64,000 nucleotides of DNA from Auanema rhodensis (GCA_964057225.1 OZ059900.1:10354001-10418000); one strand, 5' to 3'. Positions 15,085-27,193 are shown, counted from the stretch's first letter. A program made the numbers and translations. The notes: generated by a model not told the origin, from the sequence alone.

Positions 15085-15733
15085 ATGAATCAGAGTTCTG
15101 CTATGCGGCATGGACTTGCATCATGGATGTTACTGTTACTGATTAGTATTCCTGGGCTATATGCTCATTACTCTGATATTAATGCTAGCTTTCGCCACAT
15201 GAAGGTATTCATGCAAAATCTTCAACAATGAAGTAAACATCAACATTTTCAGTTTTATCATAGTTTTACCGATAAACATCTGGCAATTAATGAAGGAAGT
15301 AAGTTATTTCATCATCTTCGTTTAAAGCTTCTCATCTTCTTAATCATTAATAAACTATTCATATTCTCATCTCATTAACCACATCTTATTGATTTTCACT
15401 TTAGTTGGTATTGGTTGTCATCGTGAATATGCCCTCTATTGTAATGGTGATAAAACTCATTGTGTCTCTCCATACCAAATGTGCAATGGGGATAACGATT
15501 GTCCTGGAGGAGAAGATGAGCATTCTATTAATTGCTTATTTCACCGAATGGTGCGAACTATCTTTCTTTATGTCTTATTCTCATTTAAAAAAAAACATAT
15601 AATCTTCATTATTATATTAACTATATTTAAGCAGAAAACAACAACAAATATGCTTACTGGTCGAATTAATATTATATATGACAAATTTCGTTTTCTGGAA
15701 CACGAATTTCCAGACTTGGCTGGAGTTTATTAA
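15085..15733 (+). CDS. hen-1: Small secreted protein with one LDL-receptor class A module (HEN-1/Jelly belly-like)
   Basis: Signal peptide (LASWMLLLLISIPGLYA), four exons, LDLa module CHREYALYCNGDKTHCVSPYQMCNGDNDCPGGEDEHSINCLFHRM followed by a short helical tail, and no TM segment. The secreted LDLa call is strong. The hen-1 name rests on architecture and the C-x-F-H ending. Confidence 0.65.
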
Positions 15734-18442: not shown

Positions 18443-18875
18443 TTATAGTTATTGAGAAACAATATAGGAAATTATTATTATTCTTCTTTTTAAAGTTTAG
18501 ATTCATGTTGTTTTTTTTCAAATATTACCGTAATTATTTTGTAATTTGAAGAACTTTTTTCTCGAACAAACTCTTTATATTTTGCTATAATTAATGCTAA
18601 ATAGATATTTCAAATGAACTATTATGGATTGACAAGAAATATCAAATCGAGCTGATGCTAACTATATGATTGATTAAATATATTGATATATCAATATATG
18701 TATGTACAGTAATGAGAACAACTACTTCAGATGCAATTATGATATCATACCCGATAGCATAATTATTGATTAAACGTAGAATATTATATGTGACTAAAAC
18801 ATTGTGATTATACGGAACAAGATTTAAAGAAATATTTACAAATGACACAAATAGAGCAGCAGCATTGATAGCTTT

Positions 18876-20816
18876 CTAGCGAGATTGAAGACCAGGATGT
18901 CTTGAACTGTCTGCAAGAATAAACAGTAGATACCGTAACATTAACAAAAGTCAGAGCTTACCAAATAAATCATGTAAAATTTCAAAGTTATTGGTGTTAT
19001 GATTCATCAGATGCTCTAATTGTTTCTCAACTTCAACGAATGTTGGTCTATCAGTTTTTCTTCTCTGAAACAATTACAATATGGGAAGAGCACACAGATG
19101 TCAATGTACCTGCCAGCATGAAATCATGATGGTAGTCAATTGCTTGGGGCAGTATTCAGGTGACTTCAATCTAAATTAATCTTTTTTGAGTGTTTCATTT
19201 TCAATAAAAGGGTACCTCATATGATCTAAGAGAACGTTGCAGAGATTCTTTTCGGAGATTGTTGGATATGGGGTACGACACAAGGTTATTATTTCCCAAA
19301 GCAAAACTCCGAAAGACCAGCTTAATATTTGATTATTATAATTATAACAAGTTTTTTTAATATTTACATGTTGGATGCTTCATCGTCAGGAAAACCAAGC
19401 ATTTTCTCTATAGAATGCCATTTGATTTGCAACTCTTCTCTTGCATGCTTGCTGAAATGTTATAAGATAGTATGCTATCATAAACTATAAGGCCTACTGT
19501 GCATCAGAACTGTCATGACAAAATCCAAAATCAGCAATCTTCATAACCCAATTCGATGTGACTAAGATGTTACGAGCAGCTATATTGGAATGAATTATCT
19601 AAAATATATTTCTATAGGTTATATAAGCATATAAACGATATCAGATACGTTAATGTCATGAAGATAGGCAAGACCATTAGCTATTTGAGCACCAAAGTAT
19701 AAGCAATCGTAGATTCTCAGCTTTTCTTCGCATAAGAAATCCTTTTCAATGTAAAGAGGATCCCAGTTATCACTATAGCAGGACATAGAAGTCACCATAG
19801 GTCGTTGATTTCTCAGAAAATTTCTAAAAAAATTTTAATACGTTGTTCAGAATTTCAGTACCGTAAATTTCCATTTTCACAATATTCTACTATAAGACTC
19901 TTGTGGCAGTTCACTTCGCATACACCAAACAGTTCCAAAATATGGTTGTGTGGGGAAGCTTTAGCAAGAATATTGAACAGAGCGTCCAGTTCTTTTTCAA
20001 ATTCCTTTCTATGCCGGCCGTTAAGCAATTGCTTTACAGCTACTTCTGATATCTAAACGAAAAACGTATAATCTATAGGCTTTACAGATATACTTGAGAT
20101 TAAACTTACTTTCTCAAATGTTCCTTCGTTAATTTTCTTAGTGTAGCTTCCTTTAAAAACACGACTGAATGATCCTTTTCCAAGAAATTTGCCAACGCGT
20201 AATCTATTGACCCAATATACTAATGTGATAGCTAGCTAATGAATTACCTTTCTTCTTCCAAACTCCAGCGTTCAGTAGGATGTTTCATAAAATAATCAGA
20301 TGTTGGTGCTCTCATTACCTGTTCAATAGGAGCTTCGTTCCACCATCTTTTTCTAGCTTCTATCTGTAATAATGCTACTAGTTGCAAAGCAACAGTTGAA
20401 ACTCACAGTATTCGCAATGTTTCCACTAATATTTCTGACATTGATTATTTTAGCTGGCAAGTAAACATATGCTTGAGCGTTAGCATTTGAATCCTATACG
20501 CAAAGTTTCTATTAATTATGCAAATTATACATTATAATGAACCCACATTTTCTTCATTGCTTTTTCTCTCATCTGGTACATTCTGATTAGCAAGTACAAA
20601 CACTATCTCAAGATCTTTGATACGATCTTGTGCGCGAGTTTTAAACTTGATAATCCAATAGCGTATAACATTTTTTAAAAATAGAACAAGAATTATGAAA
20701 AGAAGAGCGAGAATTAGAAGTACTATAAATAAAATTTGTATACTATTCTATTATATTATTTTAAATATACCTAGAACAATTGTAATATTTTCATCCAAGT
20801 CTGGATCGAATGACAT
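18876..20816 (-). CDS. Single-pass FGFR-like tyrosine kinase with about 12-aa ectodomain; predicted pseudokinase (HRD replaced by HSN)
   Basis: Spliced frame is open throughout: MSFDPDLDENITIVL-TM(VLLILALLFIILVLFL)-...WSLEEERLRVGKFLGKGSFS...EVAVK...VEYCENGNLR...IIHSNIAARNILV...KIADFGF...IKWHSIE...[22 protein letters not shown]...CWQ...DRPTF. An in-frame TGA lies upstream of ATG 20816 within its exon. Stop TAG is at 18876-18878. Confidence 0.88.
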
Positions 20817-22455
20817 AGTTTTAATAAAAGAAGTTGGAACAAATATATATCAAGTTAGCCTACAAGTGAATGTATTTAATACAAATTATATCAAAATGTA
20901 TACTGTATGAGTAAATTAGTAAAATTTTATAGAATTGTGAACATTAGTCTATCAATTTGTTATTTAACGAGAAATCATGGAAGCAGCACCTTACATTCAA
21001 TATCAATTGTTTATAGAGAACAAATAGAAACGATATTAAAATGTCAGACAATAGCAAAACCTTGAGAAGACAAGAATTCTATCAGTTTGAGCCTATTGAG
21101 ATTTAGAAGTCTTTCAAATTAAATTAGACTGAGTAGTAATGGCAATAAAAGTTTTAAAAGCATGGAGAAACTGTTAGTTCTCTGCGTTAAGGCTAAACAA
21201 GGAAGTACACAAATCCATTTATCAGAGAAAATACTCGGATATTGAGAACTTCTAAGATCTAAATTCAATTACGATTTAGATGAGACCTATAGAACTTGAC
21301 AAATGAGATGCATCATCATAACTAGTAATGTTTAATGGAGTTGAATATGATATAGGAATTATATAAAAATAGAAACTAAGCTGGAAAATATTTAAATATG
21401 TCGAAAAGTCGAGAGAAAAAAAACAAGATGGCTATCGTATAATCACGGCAGGGAGTGAATTTAGAAAAAAAGGGCGCAGATAAGTAAATGGCGCCTAAAC
21501 AATATTTGAAAATATTATTTTTTTAACACAAAATATTGTAAAAACAATACAATCAACAAAGAAAAAAACTGTCATATTCTCTAGTTTTTATTCGTTTGGC
21601 GCCATAAATTGGGTATTGCAATAAGGTTTGCAGTCTGATGCGGTCAAGATCAATATCGAAAGTTGAACTTTTGAATAGACGTTCTTAGTCCACACGTTCT
21701 TTGTATTCCTATCTCTGAATAACGTAGAAAATCTGTCGCACATGTGGTTTTTAGTCATTTGTTTCTGTGAATTTCCCATGTTGTAGGTAAATTTTTCAAG
21801 TTTTTTTCAGCATTTTTTCGTTGTGAAAGATTTAAATAAGCATGGTTTGTATCAAGTGCATTTGCTTCGTTTGTGAAGTAGTCCGTTCAGTCTCTTAGAA
21901 ACTAGATCAGCGTGATACGAGATGGTCTCAATGAACTAGGAAACCTTTTGATTTCTTATCAAATAAATGCTCTTATAAACATTCTCAATGATATCGTTGC
22001 ATTTCGAGAAGAACAATAGTTTTGTTGGTGTATCTAAAGCATAGTACATATAATTTGTTTCAGGATAAGCACTTCTTGTCAAATAGAAATCACATTATTT
22101 CCTCGGTACATATGGTTAGGATGACCAGTCAGTCGGCTGTGATTTATAGAGAAAGAAATGGAAGATATACTTAAGAATATCAATACGCGATTAATGTAAA
22201 TTCTCAATTGAAGAAATTCATTACCACTTCAAGAACCAAAGTATTATAGCTACATATAACGGTTTAGTTGTTGATATTTGCATATATTTATACGAATTAG
22301 TTTATTAATTTTTCATAATTAATGATAGTTTATATAAATTTTTATTCTTAATCTTATATTATCAACAAATAATATATGTGGACAAGGATATGAATATGAT
22401 TTCAATTCTCTTGATCCTATTGATTTAACACATCTGAGTCTTTTGCTTTGTACAA

Positions 22456-25400
22456 TTAGCTCTGAAATACATCAGAAGCTATCTGAAATAGTAAAATGAA
22501 TGAATATACTGAACATTGTAGTATAACCTACGTCTGCATTAAAATTGACATATGACGGATTTTCTTGAGGACCTAAACATTCAAAAAACATTAGCATCAC
22601 CTTTGATTAAATTGAAATTTGTAACTTACAGTCATTTTCATCTAAAGCTTGTGTTTCATTTGGAGATTGTTCTAACATCCATTCAAGATATGTTGCTATC
22701 ATTGTAAATGTTGGTCGTAAATCACGTTTTTCCTGAAAATACTTTGCTCCATGCTCAGATATAAATGCAACATGTTATCAATATTCTTGACATGTTATCT
22801 GACAACTGACCTGCCAGCAAGTAACCATAAGTACATAAATCTCTTCGGGACAGTTATGAGGAGCTTCCATTCTGTTATATAATCAAGTTAATAAATGTTT
22901 TGTTTTAATCAAAATGGATATGATAACAATAGTTTTACCTATATCCAGCTTTTAAGCATGTAAATAGCTGTTCCATTGCTATAGTTGGATAAGGAGTACC
23001 ACCTAATGTCATAATTTCCCACATTACAATGCCAAAAGACCAACTGTAAACAGATTTTTAATCATAGAAATGTGAATCAAGTCTTGTAATTAGCTTACAC
23101 ATCACTTTCTATTGTTGATATTTGGTTATCAAGCGTTTCAATAGCCATCCATTTGAATGGTAATCGTTCTTTACCCTTTTTTCTGAGATAAAAATCAAAT
23201 AACAAGAAAAATATATGTATCAGTTACCTGTAATAATCATTATATTTAACATCCTTAGATAAACCGAAATCCGAAACTTTCATCACAAAGTTGGCTGCAA
23301 CTAACACATTACGAGCTGCCAAATCACGATGTACAATCTATAAGTAAATTTTCCAATAAAATCATGAGGAAATATGTTTTTTGTACCTTTCGACTGGCCA
23401 TAAATTCCATAGCTTTTGCTATTTGGAATGCAAACTGCACTAGATGTCGTTGTGTCAAGTTCTCAATAACAGGCTTTTGCGTATAACATGCTTTACGTGG
23501 TTCTAAATAATCTGTATAACCTCCGGTTTTTAGTTTTTCATCTTTAGGTCGATGTGCCCGCAGGAAATCTCTGAAATTTCATTCATGGCTCAGATTATTA
23601 ACTTCATCATACCTCAAGTTGCCATATTCGCATAACTCTAGTAATACGTATAGCGGGCCAACTCCTGAGCAACAACCAATCAAACGCAATATATTCTCAT
23701 GACAACCAATGATCTTGAACATTTCCATTTCTTGAACTAATGTGACAAGATCCTTTTCAGTTGCACTTGGCTTAACCTTCTTAACAGCTACAGGCATCTG
23801 TAATTTCAAACAGATTTTTGTAATATGATACTTATAAATTACCTCAAGCTCTTCGCCGCCAGCTTCTGGTGGCACACGTAATGTTGCTTTCCATACTTCT
23901 CCAAATGCTCCTGAACCGATAACTTCTTGTAACTGCAGGCGATCTCGTTCTATTTCCCAGTTTTGATCTGTCGAAACTTCATACTCATCAAGCATAGTTA
24001 GCTCCGAGCTTAATCGGAATCGTGTGCCTTTACGTTTAGGAGGATTTTGTTCCACAACCTAATTATTATAATAAATGAGCTATAGAAACCGTATATACAT
24101 AATAGAGCTTACTTGTACTTGATAAGATGCTGGTTGTTCTCGCCATTCACCATTACTATGCGTTTTATGCGTAACAATGATCTAAAAATTAAAAAATATT
24201 ATGGAAAATAAGAAATTATTTACCTTTTTACGTTTTCTAATAAGTGCCTCATTCTCTAAGAAATGTTTTTTCTTGTAGTACGTGATACATGTTATATATG
24301 CAACACCTAATCCAACTAATATTGAAATACTCACAATGACAAAAGCAATTAAAACTGAAATATTCAATAATATAATCAATAATAATGTTTTATTAATATT
24401 ACTTATCCACCATATAGTTAACTCTGATTCAACTGATCCCGTGGGAATTTCAAAATCCATGAAATCATTAACAAATAAAGTTGCATTAGCCATTGCCTGT
24501 CATATTATTAATTATATATAAGATGTAAGAAATAGAACTTACTAAACCGAGTGTATTTCCTGTTATACAAGCATATACTCCTTGATCATCAGTTGATATA
24601 TGCTCAATTAATAATGTTGATTCATCACGATCTTGCACTATAGTTGCACGCTAAAAAAGAATTTAACTATGAGTCAGCATAGTTCAATAAGCAAGAATTC
24701 ATTAAAAAAAACAAATATTATAACAAAGCGCGAAATAACACCGTACCTCAAAATCGGTTAAATCTTGATATACATATTTTTCGGGTGAATCATATGATGA
24801 CTCGTATGATCGCTGATTTTCAGATCGAATCATACGTGCCCATACAATATGTGGTGCTAAATCTGATATAACTTTACATCGAAATCTGGCAGTTGAATTC
24901 ACATTAACCTAGAAAAAAAAGTGGGAACATGATGAATGTGTTTAAAGTACAGCAAGATAGTTAGCAGAGCCTGCGCTACTTACCGTTTGATTGACAAGCA
25001 CATTTGGAATAATTAATGGTGGTGATCTCATTCGACTTATAATTTTTACGTGGAAAGTTCGGTTAACTGTTCCAATTTCGCTCCAAATCTTGAAGAAGTG
25101 AATAAAGTGTATTTATCACAAACGAAAGAATTTGATATACCTCGCATACATATTTCCCAGAATCATCTGTAGATGCATCTTCAAGCTCTAAACTCCATTT
25201 GCGAATACGATATTCAGATCCTGATCCACGGGGTGAATCCTGTACAATTAGAGCATCATTTTTATGCCAAATAACCTATAAACTCAATCATTAGCAAAAA
25301 CTCAATTATATTTCATCTCACCATAGGTTCAGGATAGCCACCGGCTTTACAGCTCAACCGTACTGTTCTACCTGCTGGAGATGCAACATGTCGTTCCTGT

Positions 25401-27193
25401 TCATCAGAATCTTTGAAATACGGATGAACTAAACATGAACAAATTAGAATAATCATTTAAGAAATTGTAAAACCAATATTACCTTGCTGATGAGGCCGTA
25501 ACACTGCTTTCTCAACAATTTCGGGTGGAACACTAAAGTTAGAAAAGAACGTATTTTCACTTGTTGATTTCTCTAGACTACGAACTTCTACGGATTCATC
25601 TGTATCTTCTTCTTCGACAGTTTCGTCTACAATAGCTTCTGAAATACGATGGTATATTCATTTTCCAACATTTAGCTGATGCAATATATATAAATATCTA
25701 AGAACATGTTTTGAATCATGATCCAAAAGTTATCTGTCCTACCATGAGCACTCAGAAATTGTAAAGCTTTTTCATATTTTTCATCTTGGCTTAGCCGATT
25801 CCAATCAATAAACATAAATTTGATTATTGGAATCATATCAGTTGATACAAATGGTGTTATATCAATAAAGTCAGGTACTTTATCCTCAAGAATCCAGTTA
25901 ATCAGCTTGACAATATCTAAAAATTCAAATAAATTAACTAACCATTTTTTGTTGGTTCATTGAAATAATGTGATGAGATGGTGGACGGTATGGGTGGGAG
26001 AAGTGTTGAAGAGATTGGCAGCATTCCTTTCATCTCTGATGGTACGGATGCAAAACTCATATAAGCAGGCGCCGATGATGATACGGAGGATGTGGCATAC
26101 AGTGAATTAGGTGTGGTTGATGCTACATAGTTTTGTGTCATGCCATCAGACGCAGTTTGTAAACTCAATGGCCGACCATACTTATCACATGGAGGATTGA
26201 CACACGTGGTATACATGCGAGTTATCTTTTTTTGTTTTGTTGGATATCTTGTTAGGTATTTTGCACACAAAGCTTCATTAACTTTCGTTACGTCCACATC
26301 AGAACGACGAATTTTCGAAAGTTGCCATTCACACAGACATTCAAATGGTACAACCGTCTGAGATATGCCGAGATTCAAAAAGTACTGACAAAAATCTGAA
26401 ATGAGTCACTCACAACATGCACATCATGCATGAAAGTTTTGAAATTTCTTCACGATTAAGCAGAGAATAAGAAATTTTACATAAAATCAAATTTCAAAAC
26501 ATCTTTTTCATGCAGATTTGGGAAGAAATATCACACTAAACATGCGCATAATAGGCTTACCGATGATTTCAACTGTGAAATTACGTTCAATCGATCCAAC
26601 CTGATTACTAACTTTACATGTCCACAAACCCTAGAAATAGAAATAATTAAATGAGAATAGCTTTTTTCGTTTTTCTTTAATTTTTTGAATTAAGTAAAAG
26701 CAACTTTTAATCAAAAAATGCATTAAAATTTGATGAATGTTCGTCTTCTTCAATGTCGTAAAAACAAAAAAATGTTCACTTTGATGTTGACCTTACCTGG
26801 TCTGATACTTCAACTTTACGTATTTCTAATGTCATATGTTTACGACTTTCCCGAAAACGATTAGTCTTGATTTTCCGGGGCTCCACAACTTCTCCGTTAC
26901 GATACCAAGTAACAGCAGCTTCTGATTTTGATAAAGCATAGCAAGATAGTTTAACCTGAGTTAATTGAACGCATCAATTAGAAGGCATATGCAAAGAAAA
27001 ACTTACCTTATCGCCTAGGTATACTTCATGAATTTGCTTTTCAAACGTTTTAAACCTCGGTACGCCATCTGAATTGAGATGTTCATATGTAATTCAAAAA
27101 ATGAAGCAATAGGTGGTTACCTCGGAAGAGATGTGGTGGTGTAGCCAATAATATAGGAAATATCACCAAAAATTGGAAAAGCAAATATTTCAT
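22456..27193 (-). CDS. egl-15: Fibroblast growth factor receptor (3 Ig domains, alternative exon 5, acid box, TM, tyrosine kinase)
   Basis: Signal peptide [17 protein letters not shown], Ig1 (VKLSC..W..DQGLWTC), acid box ([11 protein letters not shown]), Ig2 ([18 protein letters not shown]), Ig3 ([25 protein letters not shown]), TM segment, and kinase ([54 protein letters not shown]). The exact last exon is ambiguous. Confidence 0.96.
26411..26430 (-). promoter_or_regulatory. Intronic splicing element: tandem RBFOX (UGCAUG) sites with SUP-12-like GU-rich flank upstream of egl-15 exon 5B
   Basis: The minus strand reads TGCATG-ATG-TGCATG-TTGTG, 16-35 nt upstream of the first base of the exon at 26395. 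This resembles the UGCAUG+GUGUG element known from C. elegans egl-15 intron 4. A third TGCATG is at 26509-26514. Confidence 0.8.

What the first reader, a model, noticed from the sequence alone, without database searches (positions are those of the whole stretch)
18876..20816. Near-headless, predicted catalytically dead FGFR-like receptor directly downstream of egl-15
Seen: same strand, 1.6 kb past the egl-15 stop. No signal peptide, a 12-aa N-terminus with an NIT sequon, then a TM segment and a complete kinase fold. The catalytic loop is CAT TCC AAT (H-S-N, 19592-19584) versus CAT CGT GAT (H-R-D) in egl-15. The activation loop lacks the YY pair, the alphaF Asp is Asn (SNIWSFG) and the third G-loop Gly is Ser. 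The VAVK Lys, alphaC Glu and DFG are kept, and the frame has no stops. Established: Asp-to-Asn in HRD marks pseudokinases such as HER3; STYK1 and nematode KIN-15/16 are precedents for tiny ectodomains. Inference: a maintained pseudokinase that could act as a ligand-independent partner or dampener of EGL-15.
Basis: partly seen in the sequence, partly recalled or inferred. Interest (0 to 1): 0.8.

Follow-up and report, generated by a model that had tools for sequence, protein, structure and literature searches.

The report
Membrane-anchored dead kinase beside FGFR gene
Next to this roundworm's FGF-receptor gene lies a real, expressed gene for a membrane-tethered copy of the receptor's kinase half that has almost no outer part and has lost its catalytic residues; this is an interesting but not unprecedented kind of "pseudokinase", and its role is untested.

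Summary
A 13-exon minus-strand gene (20816-18876) encodes a 457-aa protein. It has a 12-aa N-terminal stub, one transmembrane helix, a ~100-aa juxtamembrane stretch and a complete tyrosine-kinase fold. The catalytic HRD motif reads HSN, and the invariant alphaF Asp is Asn. The activation loop has no Tyr, and the G-loop reads GKGSFS. VAVK Lys, alphaC Glu, catalytic Asn and DFG are kept.

Spliced RNA contigs from four runs (one study) confirm all 12 introns. A spliced-leader (SL1) tail sits 43 nt upstream of the ATG, with an in-frame stop between them. This fixes the 5' end, so no ectodomain exons exist upstream in this mRNA form.

The upstream neighbour is a true FGFR (egl-15-like). The two genes share eight intron positions and phases and four identical exon lengths. 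They are sisters in my tree (95/92), but an AU test does not exclude other placements. Identity is only 33%, on a very long branch.

The gene is therefore most likely an old partial tandem duplicate of the FGFR gene turned pseudokinase. The closest known kind is the nematode "FGFR-like" KIN-16 family, which includes the pseudokinase FLOR-1. Partnership with EGL-15 is untested. No orthologues were found, and selection could not be measured.

The parts
20860..20861 (-). AG of the SL1 trans-splice acceptor (TTGTAG|GCTAAC)
   Evidence: contigs of X2 and X4 carry 8 loose letters at 20861. Their reverse complement, CAAGTTTG, plus the genomic AG gives the 3' end of nematode SL1 (sequence recalled). 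Searches show the acceptor.
20817..20859 (-). 5' UTR of the mature mRNA (43 nt), with no ATG and an in-frame TGA
20771..20816 (-). exon 1: start codon, 12-aa extracellular stub (NIT sequon at 20789-20781), first residues of the TM helix
20547..20722 (-). exon 2: rest of the TM helix (residues 13-31 span 20780-20676 across intron 1) and the basic juxtamembrane start
20407..20493 (-). exon 3: juxtamembrane
20248..20363 (-). exon 4: juxtamembrane
20110..20203 (-). exon 5: G-loop GKGSFS (20181-20164)
19862..20052 (-). exon 6: VAVK Lys (20043-20032), alphaC Glu (19992-19990), hinge
19649..19823 (-). exon 7: short kinase insert and alphaE
19498..19598 (-). exon 8: catalytic loop HSNIAARN (19592-19569; HSN = 19592-19584) and DFG (19532-19524)
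19368..19451 (-). exon 9: Tyr-less activation loop, IKWHSIE, Ser355-Asn356 of SNIWSFG
19216..19320 (-). exon 10: alphaF-alphaG ([16 protein letters not shown])
19110..19170 (-). exon 11: alphaH up to CWQ
18962..19064 (-). exon 12: RPTF, alphaI and start of the short tail
18876..18910 (-). exon 13: last 11 codons and TAG stop (18878-18876)
18600..18875 (-). 3' UTR, at least this far (the X1 contig runs about 29 nt beyond 18600)
   Evidence: table 8
22456..24058 (-). Context: kinase and C-tail exons of the neighbouring FGFR (egl-15-like) gene, the inferred parent. HRD, YY pair and YVNF tail motif present.

Best explanation
This is a real, independently trans-spliced gene. It encodes a 457-aa single-pass membrane protein with no cleavable signal peptide. 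Its acidic 12-residue N-terminus should face outside and its basic flank inside, which places a complete but catalytically crippled receptor-tyrosine-kinase domain in the cytoplasm. It most likely arose by partial tandem duplication of the kinase-encoding 3' half of the adjacent FGFR (egl-15-like) gene. It then gained a new 5' end and diverged fast. Inferred mechanism: it cannot carry out normal phosphotransfer because the catalytic base Asp is Asn. It cannot be switched by activation-loop phosphorylation because the HRD Arg and the loop tyrosines are gone. It keeps the fold and the nucleotide-binding residues. It therefore most likely acts at the membrane as a non-catalytic scaffold or allosteric regulator of an active RTK pathway, as FLOR-1 does for OLD-1 signalling and HER3 for ErbB receptors. 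Its partner is unknown; EGL-15 is one candidate. Shown here: gene model, expression, 5' end, motif losses, shared gene structure. Inferred: topology, origin by duplication, non-catalytic role.
For: All 12 introns and the SL1 junction are seen in RNA contigs of 4 runs, identical to the genome. There is an in-frame stop in the 43-nt leader. Flank charges are -4 on the N side and +5 on the C side of the helix. Among 57 columns that are >=85% conserved in 99 tyrosine-kinase domains, the protein keeps 43 (the FGFR neighbour keeps 52). Its losses include both 100%-invariant Asp residues (HRD Asp and alphaF Asp, both to Asn), the HRD Arg, the activation-loop Tyr and the third G-loop Gly. Lys, Glu, catalytic Asn, DFG, WSFG, CW and RPTF are kept. 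Eight consecutive introns match the neighbour in alignment column and phase, and four consecutive exons have identical lengths (84, 105, 61, 103 nt), the last lying beyond the kinase core. The neighbour is an FGFR: its N-lobe exon scores 63 bits to FGFR2 and all 60 best solved matches are FGFR1-3. In an ML tree of 44 tyrosine-kinase domains the two are sisters at UFBoot 95 / SH-aLRT 92. Without the neighbour, the protein falls in the same neighbourhood. Its best BLAST hit among 231 fetched kinases plus the neighbour is the neighbour (184 bits). Precedents: PMC10523662 and bioRxiv 10.64898/2026.07.31.741986 (FLOR-1/OLD-1).
Against: Identity to the neighbour is only 33%. In the N-lobe exon the protein scores higher to RET, PDGFRA and even plant RLK-type kinases than to the neighbour. 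The AU test does not reject a tree that separates the two (p 0.19). Its branch is four times the neighbour's, so long-branch effects are possible, and no other nematode RTK was in the tree. No orthologue was found, so purifying selection is not shown. There is no protein-level, localisation or interaction evidence. Asn in place of the HRD Asp leaves weak activity in HER3 (recalled), so 'dead' is a prediction.
Confidence: 0.6

Rival explanations
1. One reading: the protein is a dedicated, ligand-independent partner or dampener of the neighbouring FGFR (EGL-15), pairing with it through the kinase or TM domain and either allosterically activating it or titrating it.
For: It descends from the FGFR kinase half. 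It is adjacent on the same strand. Both genes' RNAs are present in the same four runs. FGFR-type interface regions such as [10 protein letters not shown] and TPYPTI are kept.
Against: Adjacency reflects origin, not function. Its N-lobe has diverged from the neighbour's almost beyond recognition (9.7 bits). It lacks the neighbour's YVNF docking motif and has no tail tyrosines. No co-expression at cell level or binding data exist. Contig depth cannot rank expression. For FLOR-1/OLD-1, no physical interaction could be confirmed (bioRxiv 10.64898/2026.07.31.741986).
Confidence: 0.15
2. It is still a weak or atypical kinase rather than a pseudokinase: nucleotide binding is intact and phosphotransfer proceeds slowly without the Asp base, as reported for HER3.
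For: VAVK Lys, alphaC Glu, catalytic-loop Asn and DFG Asp are all kept.
Against: Both Asp residues that are invariant in all 99 compared tyrosine kinases are replaced. The HRD Arg, activation-loop Tyr and third G-loop Gly are also lost. This joint loss pattern is typical of relaxed selection on catalysis.
Confidence: 0.15
3. It is a transcribed, decaying duplicate with no function of its own.
For: Its branch is very long (3.64 against 0.9). Catalytic residues are lost. No orthologue was found in very large databases.
Against: After divergence to 33% identity there is still no stop or frameshift in 457 codons, and all 24 splice sites are intact and used. It keeps 75% of the kinase-wide conserved positions, and the losses cluster in catalytic and regulatory sites rather than in fold-determining ones. 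It has its own SL1 site and a clean leader. The known KIN16 family is reported as fast-evolving, so missing orthologues are expected (PMC4672506).
Confidence: 0.1

Closest known systems
KIN-16 family of nematode receptor-like tyrosine kinases (KIN-15, KIN-16, OLD-1, OLD-2, FLOR-1)
   Same: The family is described as a nematode-specific, 'FGFR-like' RTK family (PMC8080662). In the members described, FLOR-1 (466 aa) and OLD-1 (522 aa), signal peptide and TM lie within the first 78-102 residues, followed by the kinase domain (bioRxiv 10.64898/2026.07.31.741986). It is fast-evolving and has a few members outside Caenorhabditis, for example two in Haemonchus (PMC4672506). It includes a functional pseudokinase, FLOR-1 (PMC10523662). 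Size (457 aa), layout and FGFR affinity match.
   Different: This protein has no signal peptide and only 12 extracellular residues. FLOR-1 lacks the G-loop, the HRD Asp, the catalytic Asn and the DFG Asp, whereas this protein keeps the G-loop core, Asn and DFG and has Asp-to-Asn changes at HRD and alphaF. It lies beside egl-15, not in the chil/KIN-16 clusters. Sequence membership could not be tested because no KIN-16 sequence was retrievable.
EGL-15 / FGFR family
   Same: The adjacent gene is an FGFR. The two share 8 intron positions and phases and 4 exon lengths. They are sisters in the best tree. The catalytic-loop exon's best solved match is FGFR2. The kinase insert is short.
   Different: There are no Ig domains or acid box, no YY pair, no HRD, and no YxN docking site. 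Identity is only 33%. The N-lobe is closer to RET and PDGFRA than to FGFR.
HER3/ErbB3 (recalled from established literature; also discussed in PMC10523662 and PMC2174628)
   Same: An RTK-derived pseudokinase with Asn in place of the HRD Asp while nucleotide-binding residues are largely kept. It works as a non-autonomous allosteric partner of active paralogues.
   Different: HER3 has a full ligand-binding ectodomain and a long phosphotyrosine-rich tail. This protein has neither. HER3 keeps the HRD Arg and the alphaF Asp.
STYK1/NOK (recalled)
   Same: A single-pass membrane protein with a very short extracellular stub and an RTK-like kinase domain; no ligand-binding domain.
   Different: It is a vertebrate gene regarded as catalytically competent. 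No relationship was tested here.
FGFRL1 (recalled)
   Same: A non-signalling FGFR paralogue thought to modulate FGF signalling.
   Different: It has the opposite design: it keeps the ectodomain and lacks the kinase domain.

Membership tests
Protein tyrosine kinase fold (Pfam PF07714) | Match to the PK_Tyr_Ser-Thr profile; AARN in the catalytic loop; xKW..E in the P+1 loop | tested here: met
   Exons 6, 8 and 10 each pass the Pfam cut-off on their own (30, 34.6 and 32.5 bits). HSNIAARN and IKWHSIE are present.
Pseudokinase (sequence definition: lacks at least one of the VAIK Lys, HRD Asp or DFG Asp) | Loss of the HRD catalytic Asp | tested here: met
   Asn300 sits at a column where all 99 compared tyrosine kinases have Asp. 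The codon AAT at 19586-19584 is identical in 4 RNA runs.
Pseudokinase | Absence of phosphotransfer activity | not testable with these tools
   Needs an enzyme assay.
FGFR family | Ig-like ectodomain with acid box and signal peptide | tested here: not met
   Only 12 extracellular residues. The mRNA starts at an SL1 site 43 nt before the ATG.
FGFR family | Kinase domain closest to FGFRs | tested here: inconclusive
   Best solved matches per exon: RET/PDGFRA (exon 6), FGFR2 (exon 8), RET then FGFR3/4 (exon 10). Sister to the FGFR neighbour at 95/92, but AU p is 0.19 for the alternative.
FGFR family | Tandem tyrosines (YY) in the activation loop | tested here: not met
   No Tyr in residues 318-344. 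The neighbour has NDYYR.
FGFR family (descent from the local FGFR gene) | Shared exon-intron structure with the neighbouring FGFR gene | tested here: met
   8 of 8 introns lie at the same column (one offset by one codon) and in the same phase. Exon lengths 84, 105, 61 and 103 nt are identical. No other RTK gene structure was available as a control.
KIN-16 family | Receptor-like layout: short extracellular part, one TM helix, FGFR-like kinase domain, about 460-520 aa | tested here: met
   457 aa, TM at residues 13-31, kinase about 140-430. Family description from PMC8080662 and bioRxiv 10.64898/2026.07.31.741986. Unlike FLOR-1 and OLD-1, it has no signal peptide.
KIN-16 family | Clusters with KIN-15, KIN-16, OLD-1 and FLOR-1 in a kinase-domain tree | not testable with these tools
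   No KIN-16 family sequence could be fetched.
HER3-type nucleotide-binding pseudokinase | Asn in place of the HRD Asp with the ATP/Mg ligands (Lys, catalytic Asn, DFG Asp) kept | tested here: met
HER3-type nucleotide-binding pseudokinase | Allosteric activation of an active paralogue in a heterodimer | not tested
   No interaction or structural data. The joined protein was not folded (see report text).

The most novel reading that the evidence does not exclude
The FGF receptor gene of this nematode has spawned, by duplication of its kinase half, an ectodomain-less membrane pseudokinase that is a dedicated allosteric partner or brake of EGL-15. This would be an FGFR-family counterpart of HER3, with no vertebrate equivalent known to me. 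It could also be a surviving 'missing link' showing that the nematode FGFR-like KIN-16 receptors, including the immune pseudokinase FLOR-1, arose from egl-15.
Probability: 0.12. Interest if true: 0.7.

Novelty: new member of a known kind. Interest (0 to 1): 0.4.

Why it matters
If the function holds, FGF signalling in this worm would have a built-in, ligand-independent modulator, which is testable by knock-out against the well-known egl-15 phenotypes. Independent of function, the locus is a clean example of how a short-ectodomain, FGFR-like receptor kinase can be born from an FGFR gene. The exon-intron skeleton of the parent's kinase half (same phases, several identical exon lengths) survives at 33% identity. 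The locus also shows which residues go together when catalysis is given up: HRD Arg and Asp, the activation-loop Tyr and the alphaF Asp. This bears on the unexplained origin of the fast-evolving nematode KIN-16 family, one member of which (FLOR-1) is a functional immune pseudokinase.

Tried and rejected
1. The exhaustive HMMER search of 1.84 billion representatives with exon 6 gave only 7 hits at E<=1e-3. They were plant RLK-type and protist kinases; there was no self hit and no nematode hit.

2. The word search with the neighbour's 158-aa ORF found nothing. The length filter excludes full-length FGFRs.

3. The metagenome scan with exon 6 found nothing.

4. I aligned exon pieces by reference onto a fetched full-length kinase (P0004) to get past the length filter. 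MAFFT scattered the fragments in most attempts (A1-A3, A5, A6, A8, A9). The two usable alignments (A7 with the neighbour's pieces, A4 with this gene's pieces) returned 120 rows each, dominated by protist, torso, Src and Srms kinases. There was no nematode orthologue and no hit closer to the protein than its neighbour. These hits did serve as the tree panel.

5. The ESM Atlas search with exon 6 returned only 'protein kinase'.

6. An exact look-up of a window ORF to identify the assembly found nothing on record, so the species stayed unidentified.

7. Morgan & Greenwald 1993 and Popovici 1999 are not held.

8. Read-through from egl-15, or an upstream ectodomain, is rejected because of the SL1 junction, the in-frame stop in the leader and the separate contigs. 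A classic SL2 operon is judged unlikely: the gap is about 1.5 kb and the leader is SL1-type.

9. A recent duplicate is rejected: there is no DNA-level similarity and only 33% protein identity.

Full report
**What is there.** On the minus strand between 20816 and 18876 I built a 13-exon model from the sequence. Every intron is GT-AG and 38-57 nt long. The CDS is 1374 nt and encodes 457 aa. Laying the Logan contigs of four runs (one study, organism coded) on 18600-22600 gave spliced contigs of about 1.7 kb. These reproduce all 12 introns at exactly the modelled bases, with no base differences. The runs are labelled only 'RNA?', but spliced contigs show that they contain RNA. The gene is therefore transcribed and processed as modelled.

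**The 5' end.** In two runs the contig ends at 20861 with eight extra letters. Their reverse complement is CAAGTTTG. Together with the genomic AG (20861-20860, acceptor TTGTAG) this is the 3' end of the nematode SL1 spliced leader...CCCAAGTTTGAG (sequence recalled from established knowledge). The mature leader is 43 nt, contains no ATG and carries an in-frame TGA. The ATG at 20816 is thus the first start codon of this trans-spliced mRNA. No upstream exon can add an ectodomain in this form.

The FGFR neighbour's transcript is a separate contig that ends near 22364. Its stop is at 22458-22456, or 22474-22472 with an alternative donor, which is 1.64 kb from the ATG. Low-depth unspliced contigs lie in the gap (21034-21309, 21681-21984, 22062-22262). 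They may be outron, read-through or something else, and I could not tell which.

**The protein.** Residues 1-12 are acidic (net -4) and include the NIT sequon. Residues 13-31 form the only strongly hydrophobic segment. The next 15 residues are basic (net +5). By the positive-inside rule (established knowledge; inference here) this is a signal-anchor with the N-terminus outside and the kinase inside. The sequon sits right at the membrane, so glycosylation is doubtful (inference). A juxtamembrane stretch of about 100 aa follows, then a full kinase domain. Separate exons pass the Pfam PK_Tyr_Ser-Thr cut-off.

- G-loop GKGSFS
- VAVK
- alphaC Glu194
- HSNIAARN
- DFG
- a Tyr-less activation loop
- IKWHSIE
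- SNIWSFG
- CW..RPTF

Of 57 columns with one residue in at least 85% of them, the protein keeps 43 and the FGFR neighbour keeps 52. The 14 losses include both Asp residues that are invariant in all 99 (HRD Asp300 to Asn, alphaF Asp356 to Asn). They also include the HRD Arg (to Ser), the activation-loop Tyr (to His), the Pro of PxKW and the third G-loop Gly. Fold-defining and nucleotide-binding residues are kept. This is the pattern expected when catalysis and activation-loop control are given up but the fold is still needed.

**Relationship to the neighbour.** The neighbour is a genuine FGFR:
- Its N-lobe exon scores 63 bits to human FGFR2, and all 60 best solved matches are FGFR1-3.
- Its catalytic-loop exon matches FGFR2 at 41 bits, second only to one EGFR entry that matched in two stretches.
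- It has HRD, the YY pair and a YVNF tail motif.
- Upstream exons give sub-threshold Ig hits.

The finding's protein is only 33% identical to it over 322 aa. Exon by exon, its best solved matches are RET and PDGFRA (exon 6, 22 bits), FGFR2 (exon 8, 30 bits), and RET then FGFR3/4 (exon 10, 31 and 28 bits). By sequence alone it is an RTK of the FGFR/RET/PDGFR group, not clearly an FGFR.

Gene structure says more. Mapped on a pairwise alignment, its introns 5-12 and the neighbour's introns 1-8 fall at the same columns (one offset by a single codon) and in the same phases (0, 2, 0, 2, 2, 2, 0, 1). Four consecutive exons have identical lengths in both genes (84, 105, 61, 103 nt). The last of these extends past the kinase core into the tail.

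In an IQ-TREE (PMSF) tree of 44 tyrosine-kinase domains the two genes are sisters with UFBoot 95 / SH-aLRT 92. The pseudokinase branch is four times as long as the neighbour's. Leaving either gene out places the other in the same neighbourhood. Among 231 fetched kinases the neighbour remains the protein's best BLAST hit.

Three caveats apply:
- The AU test does not reject a tree that separates them (p 0.19).
- The panel held no other nematode RTK.
- I had no second RTK gene structure as a control for intron sharing.

I conclude that an old partial tandem duplication of the FGFR gene's 3' half is the most likely origin, at about 60-65%.

**Relatives elsewhere.** An exhaustive HMMER search of 1.84 billion representatives with exon 6 found no close relative and not even the protein itself. 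Two profile word searches in the right length ranges found nothing closer than the neighbour. A metagenome scan was blank. These searches were made exon by exon, by reference, and are weak for distant kin. They show that no relative with about 50% identity or more in exon 6 is in those collections. They do not show that the gene is unique.

**Comparison with what is known.** Nematodes have a family called KIN-16.
- It is described as nematode-specific and 'FGFR-like' (PMC8080662, citing Manning).
- FLOR-1 and OLD-1 are receptor-like proteins of 466 and 522 aa, whose signal peptide and TM lie in the first 78-102 residues (bioRxiv 10.64898/2026.07.31.741986).
- It is fast-evolving, with 15 members in C. 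elegans and two in Haemonchus (PMC4672506).
- One member, FLOR-1, is a functional pseudokinase required with the active kinase OLD-1 for oomycete recognition (PMC10523662). A direct FLOR-1/OLD-1 interaction could not be confirmed (the bioRxiv paper).

The present protein fits this kind in size, layout and FGFR affinity, so I rate it a new member of a known kind. It differs in three ways. It has no signal peptide. It has its own set of degenerate residues: Asp-to-Asn at HRD and alphaF, with G-loop core, catalytic Asn and DFG kept, whereas FLOR-1 lost those. And it sits beside egl-15 with the parent's intron skeleton intact. Sequence membership in KIN-16 could not be tested.

**Mechanism.** Shown: an expressed, intact, membrane-anchored RTK-type domain lacking the catalytic base. 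Inferred: it works without phosphotransfer, as a membrane scaffold or allosteric regulator of an active RTK pathway. That EGL-15 is the partner is possible but rests only on descent and adjacency, and I give it about 0.15. Residual HER3-like activity and non-functional decay are the other rivals.

The spliced protein has no reference, so I did not hand the joined sequence to any search, family, structure-prediction or look-up tool. Full-length database searches, AlphaFold folding and fold searches were therefore omitted. The join was made only inside local scripts from window.fa, for alignments, local BLAST/phmmer against fetched proteins and the trees. dN/dS, synteny in relatives and identification of the species could not be done.

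Noticed in passing
window 22482-22572 (minus strand): The FGFR (egl-15-like) gene uses two donors 4 nt apart (exon ending at 22532 or at 22528) joined to the same acceptor at 22482, in different runs. This gives two C-termini just after a YVNF (YxN, GRB2/SEM-5-type) motif: ...[11 protein letters not shown] and ...NADVDSF*.
   Followed up: partly
window 21034-21309, 21681-21984, 22062-22262: Low-depth, unspliced RNA contigs lie in the 1.6-kb gap between the FGFR gene and the pseudokinase gene. They could be outron of the trans-spliced gene, read-through from the FGFR gene or an independent transcript.
   Followed up: no
window 25938-26378 (minus strand): A 146-aa ORF lies inside the FGFR gene's ectodomain region, between Ig-like exons. 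It is Cys-containing at the start, then Ser/Thr/Pro-rich, and has no Pfam match. It may be a nematode-specific insert exon of the receptor or a nested gene.
   Followed up: partly
window 15389-15733 (plus strand): An ORF with an LDL-receptor class A module (Pfam E 7e-4, below the cut-off), belonging to an unmodelled gene downstream of the pseudokinase.
   Followed up: partly
window 19864-20052 (exon 6): The N-lobe exon of the pseudokinase scores higher to plant RLK/Pelle-type and protist TKL-like kinases (36-49 bits) than to the adjacent FGFR (9.7 bits) or to human RTKs (22 bits). This is probably convergence on a generic 'LxGxC...LVxEYxxNGxL' pattern after relaxed constraint.
   Followed up: partly
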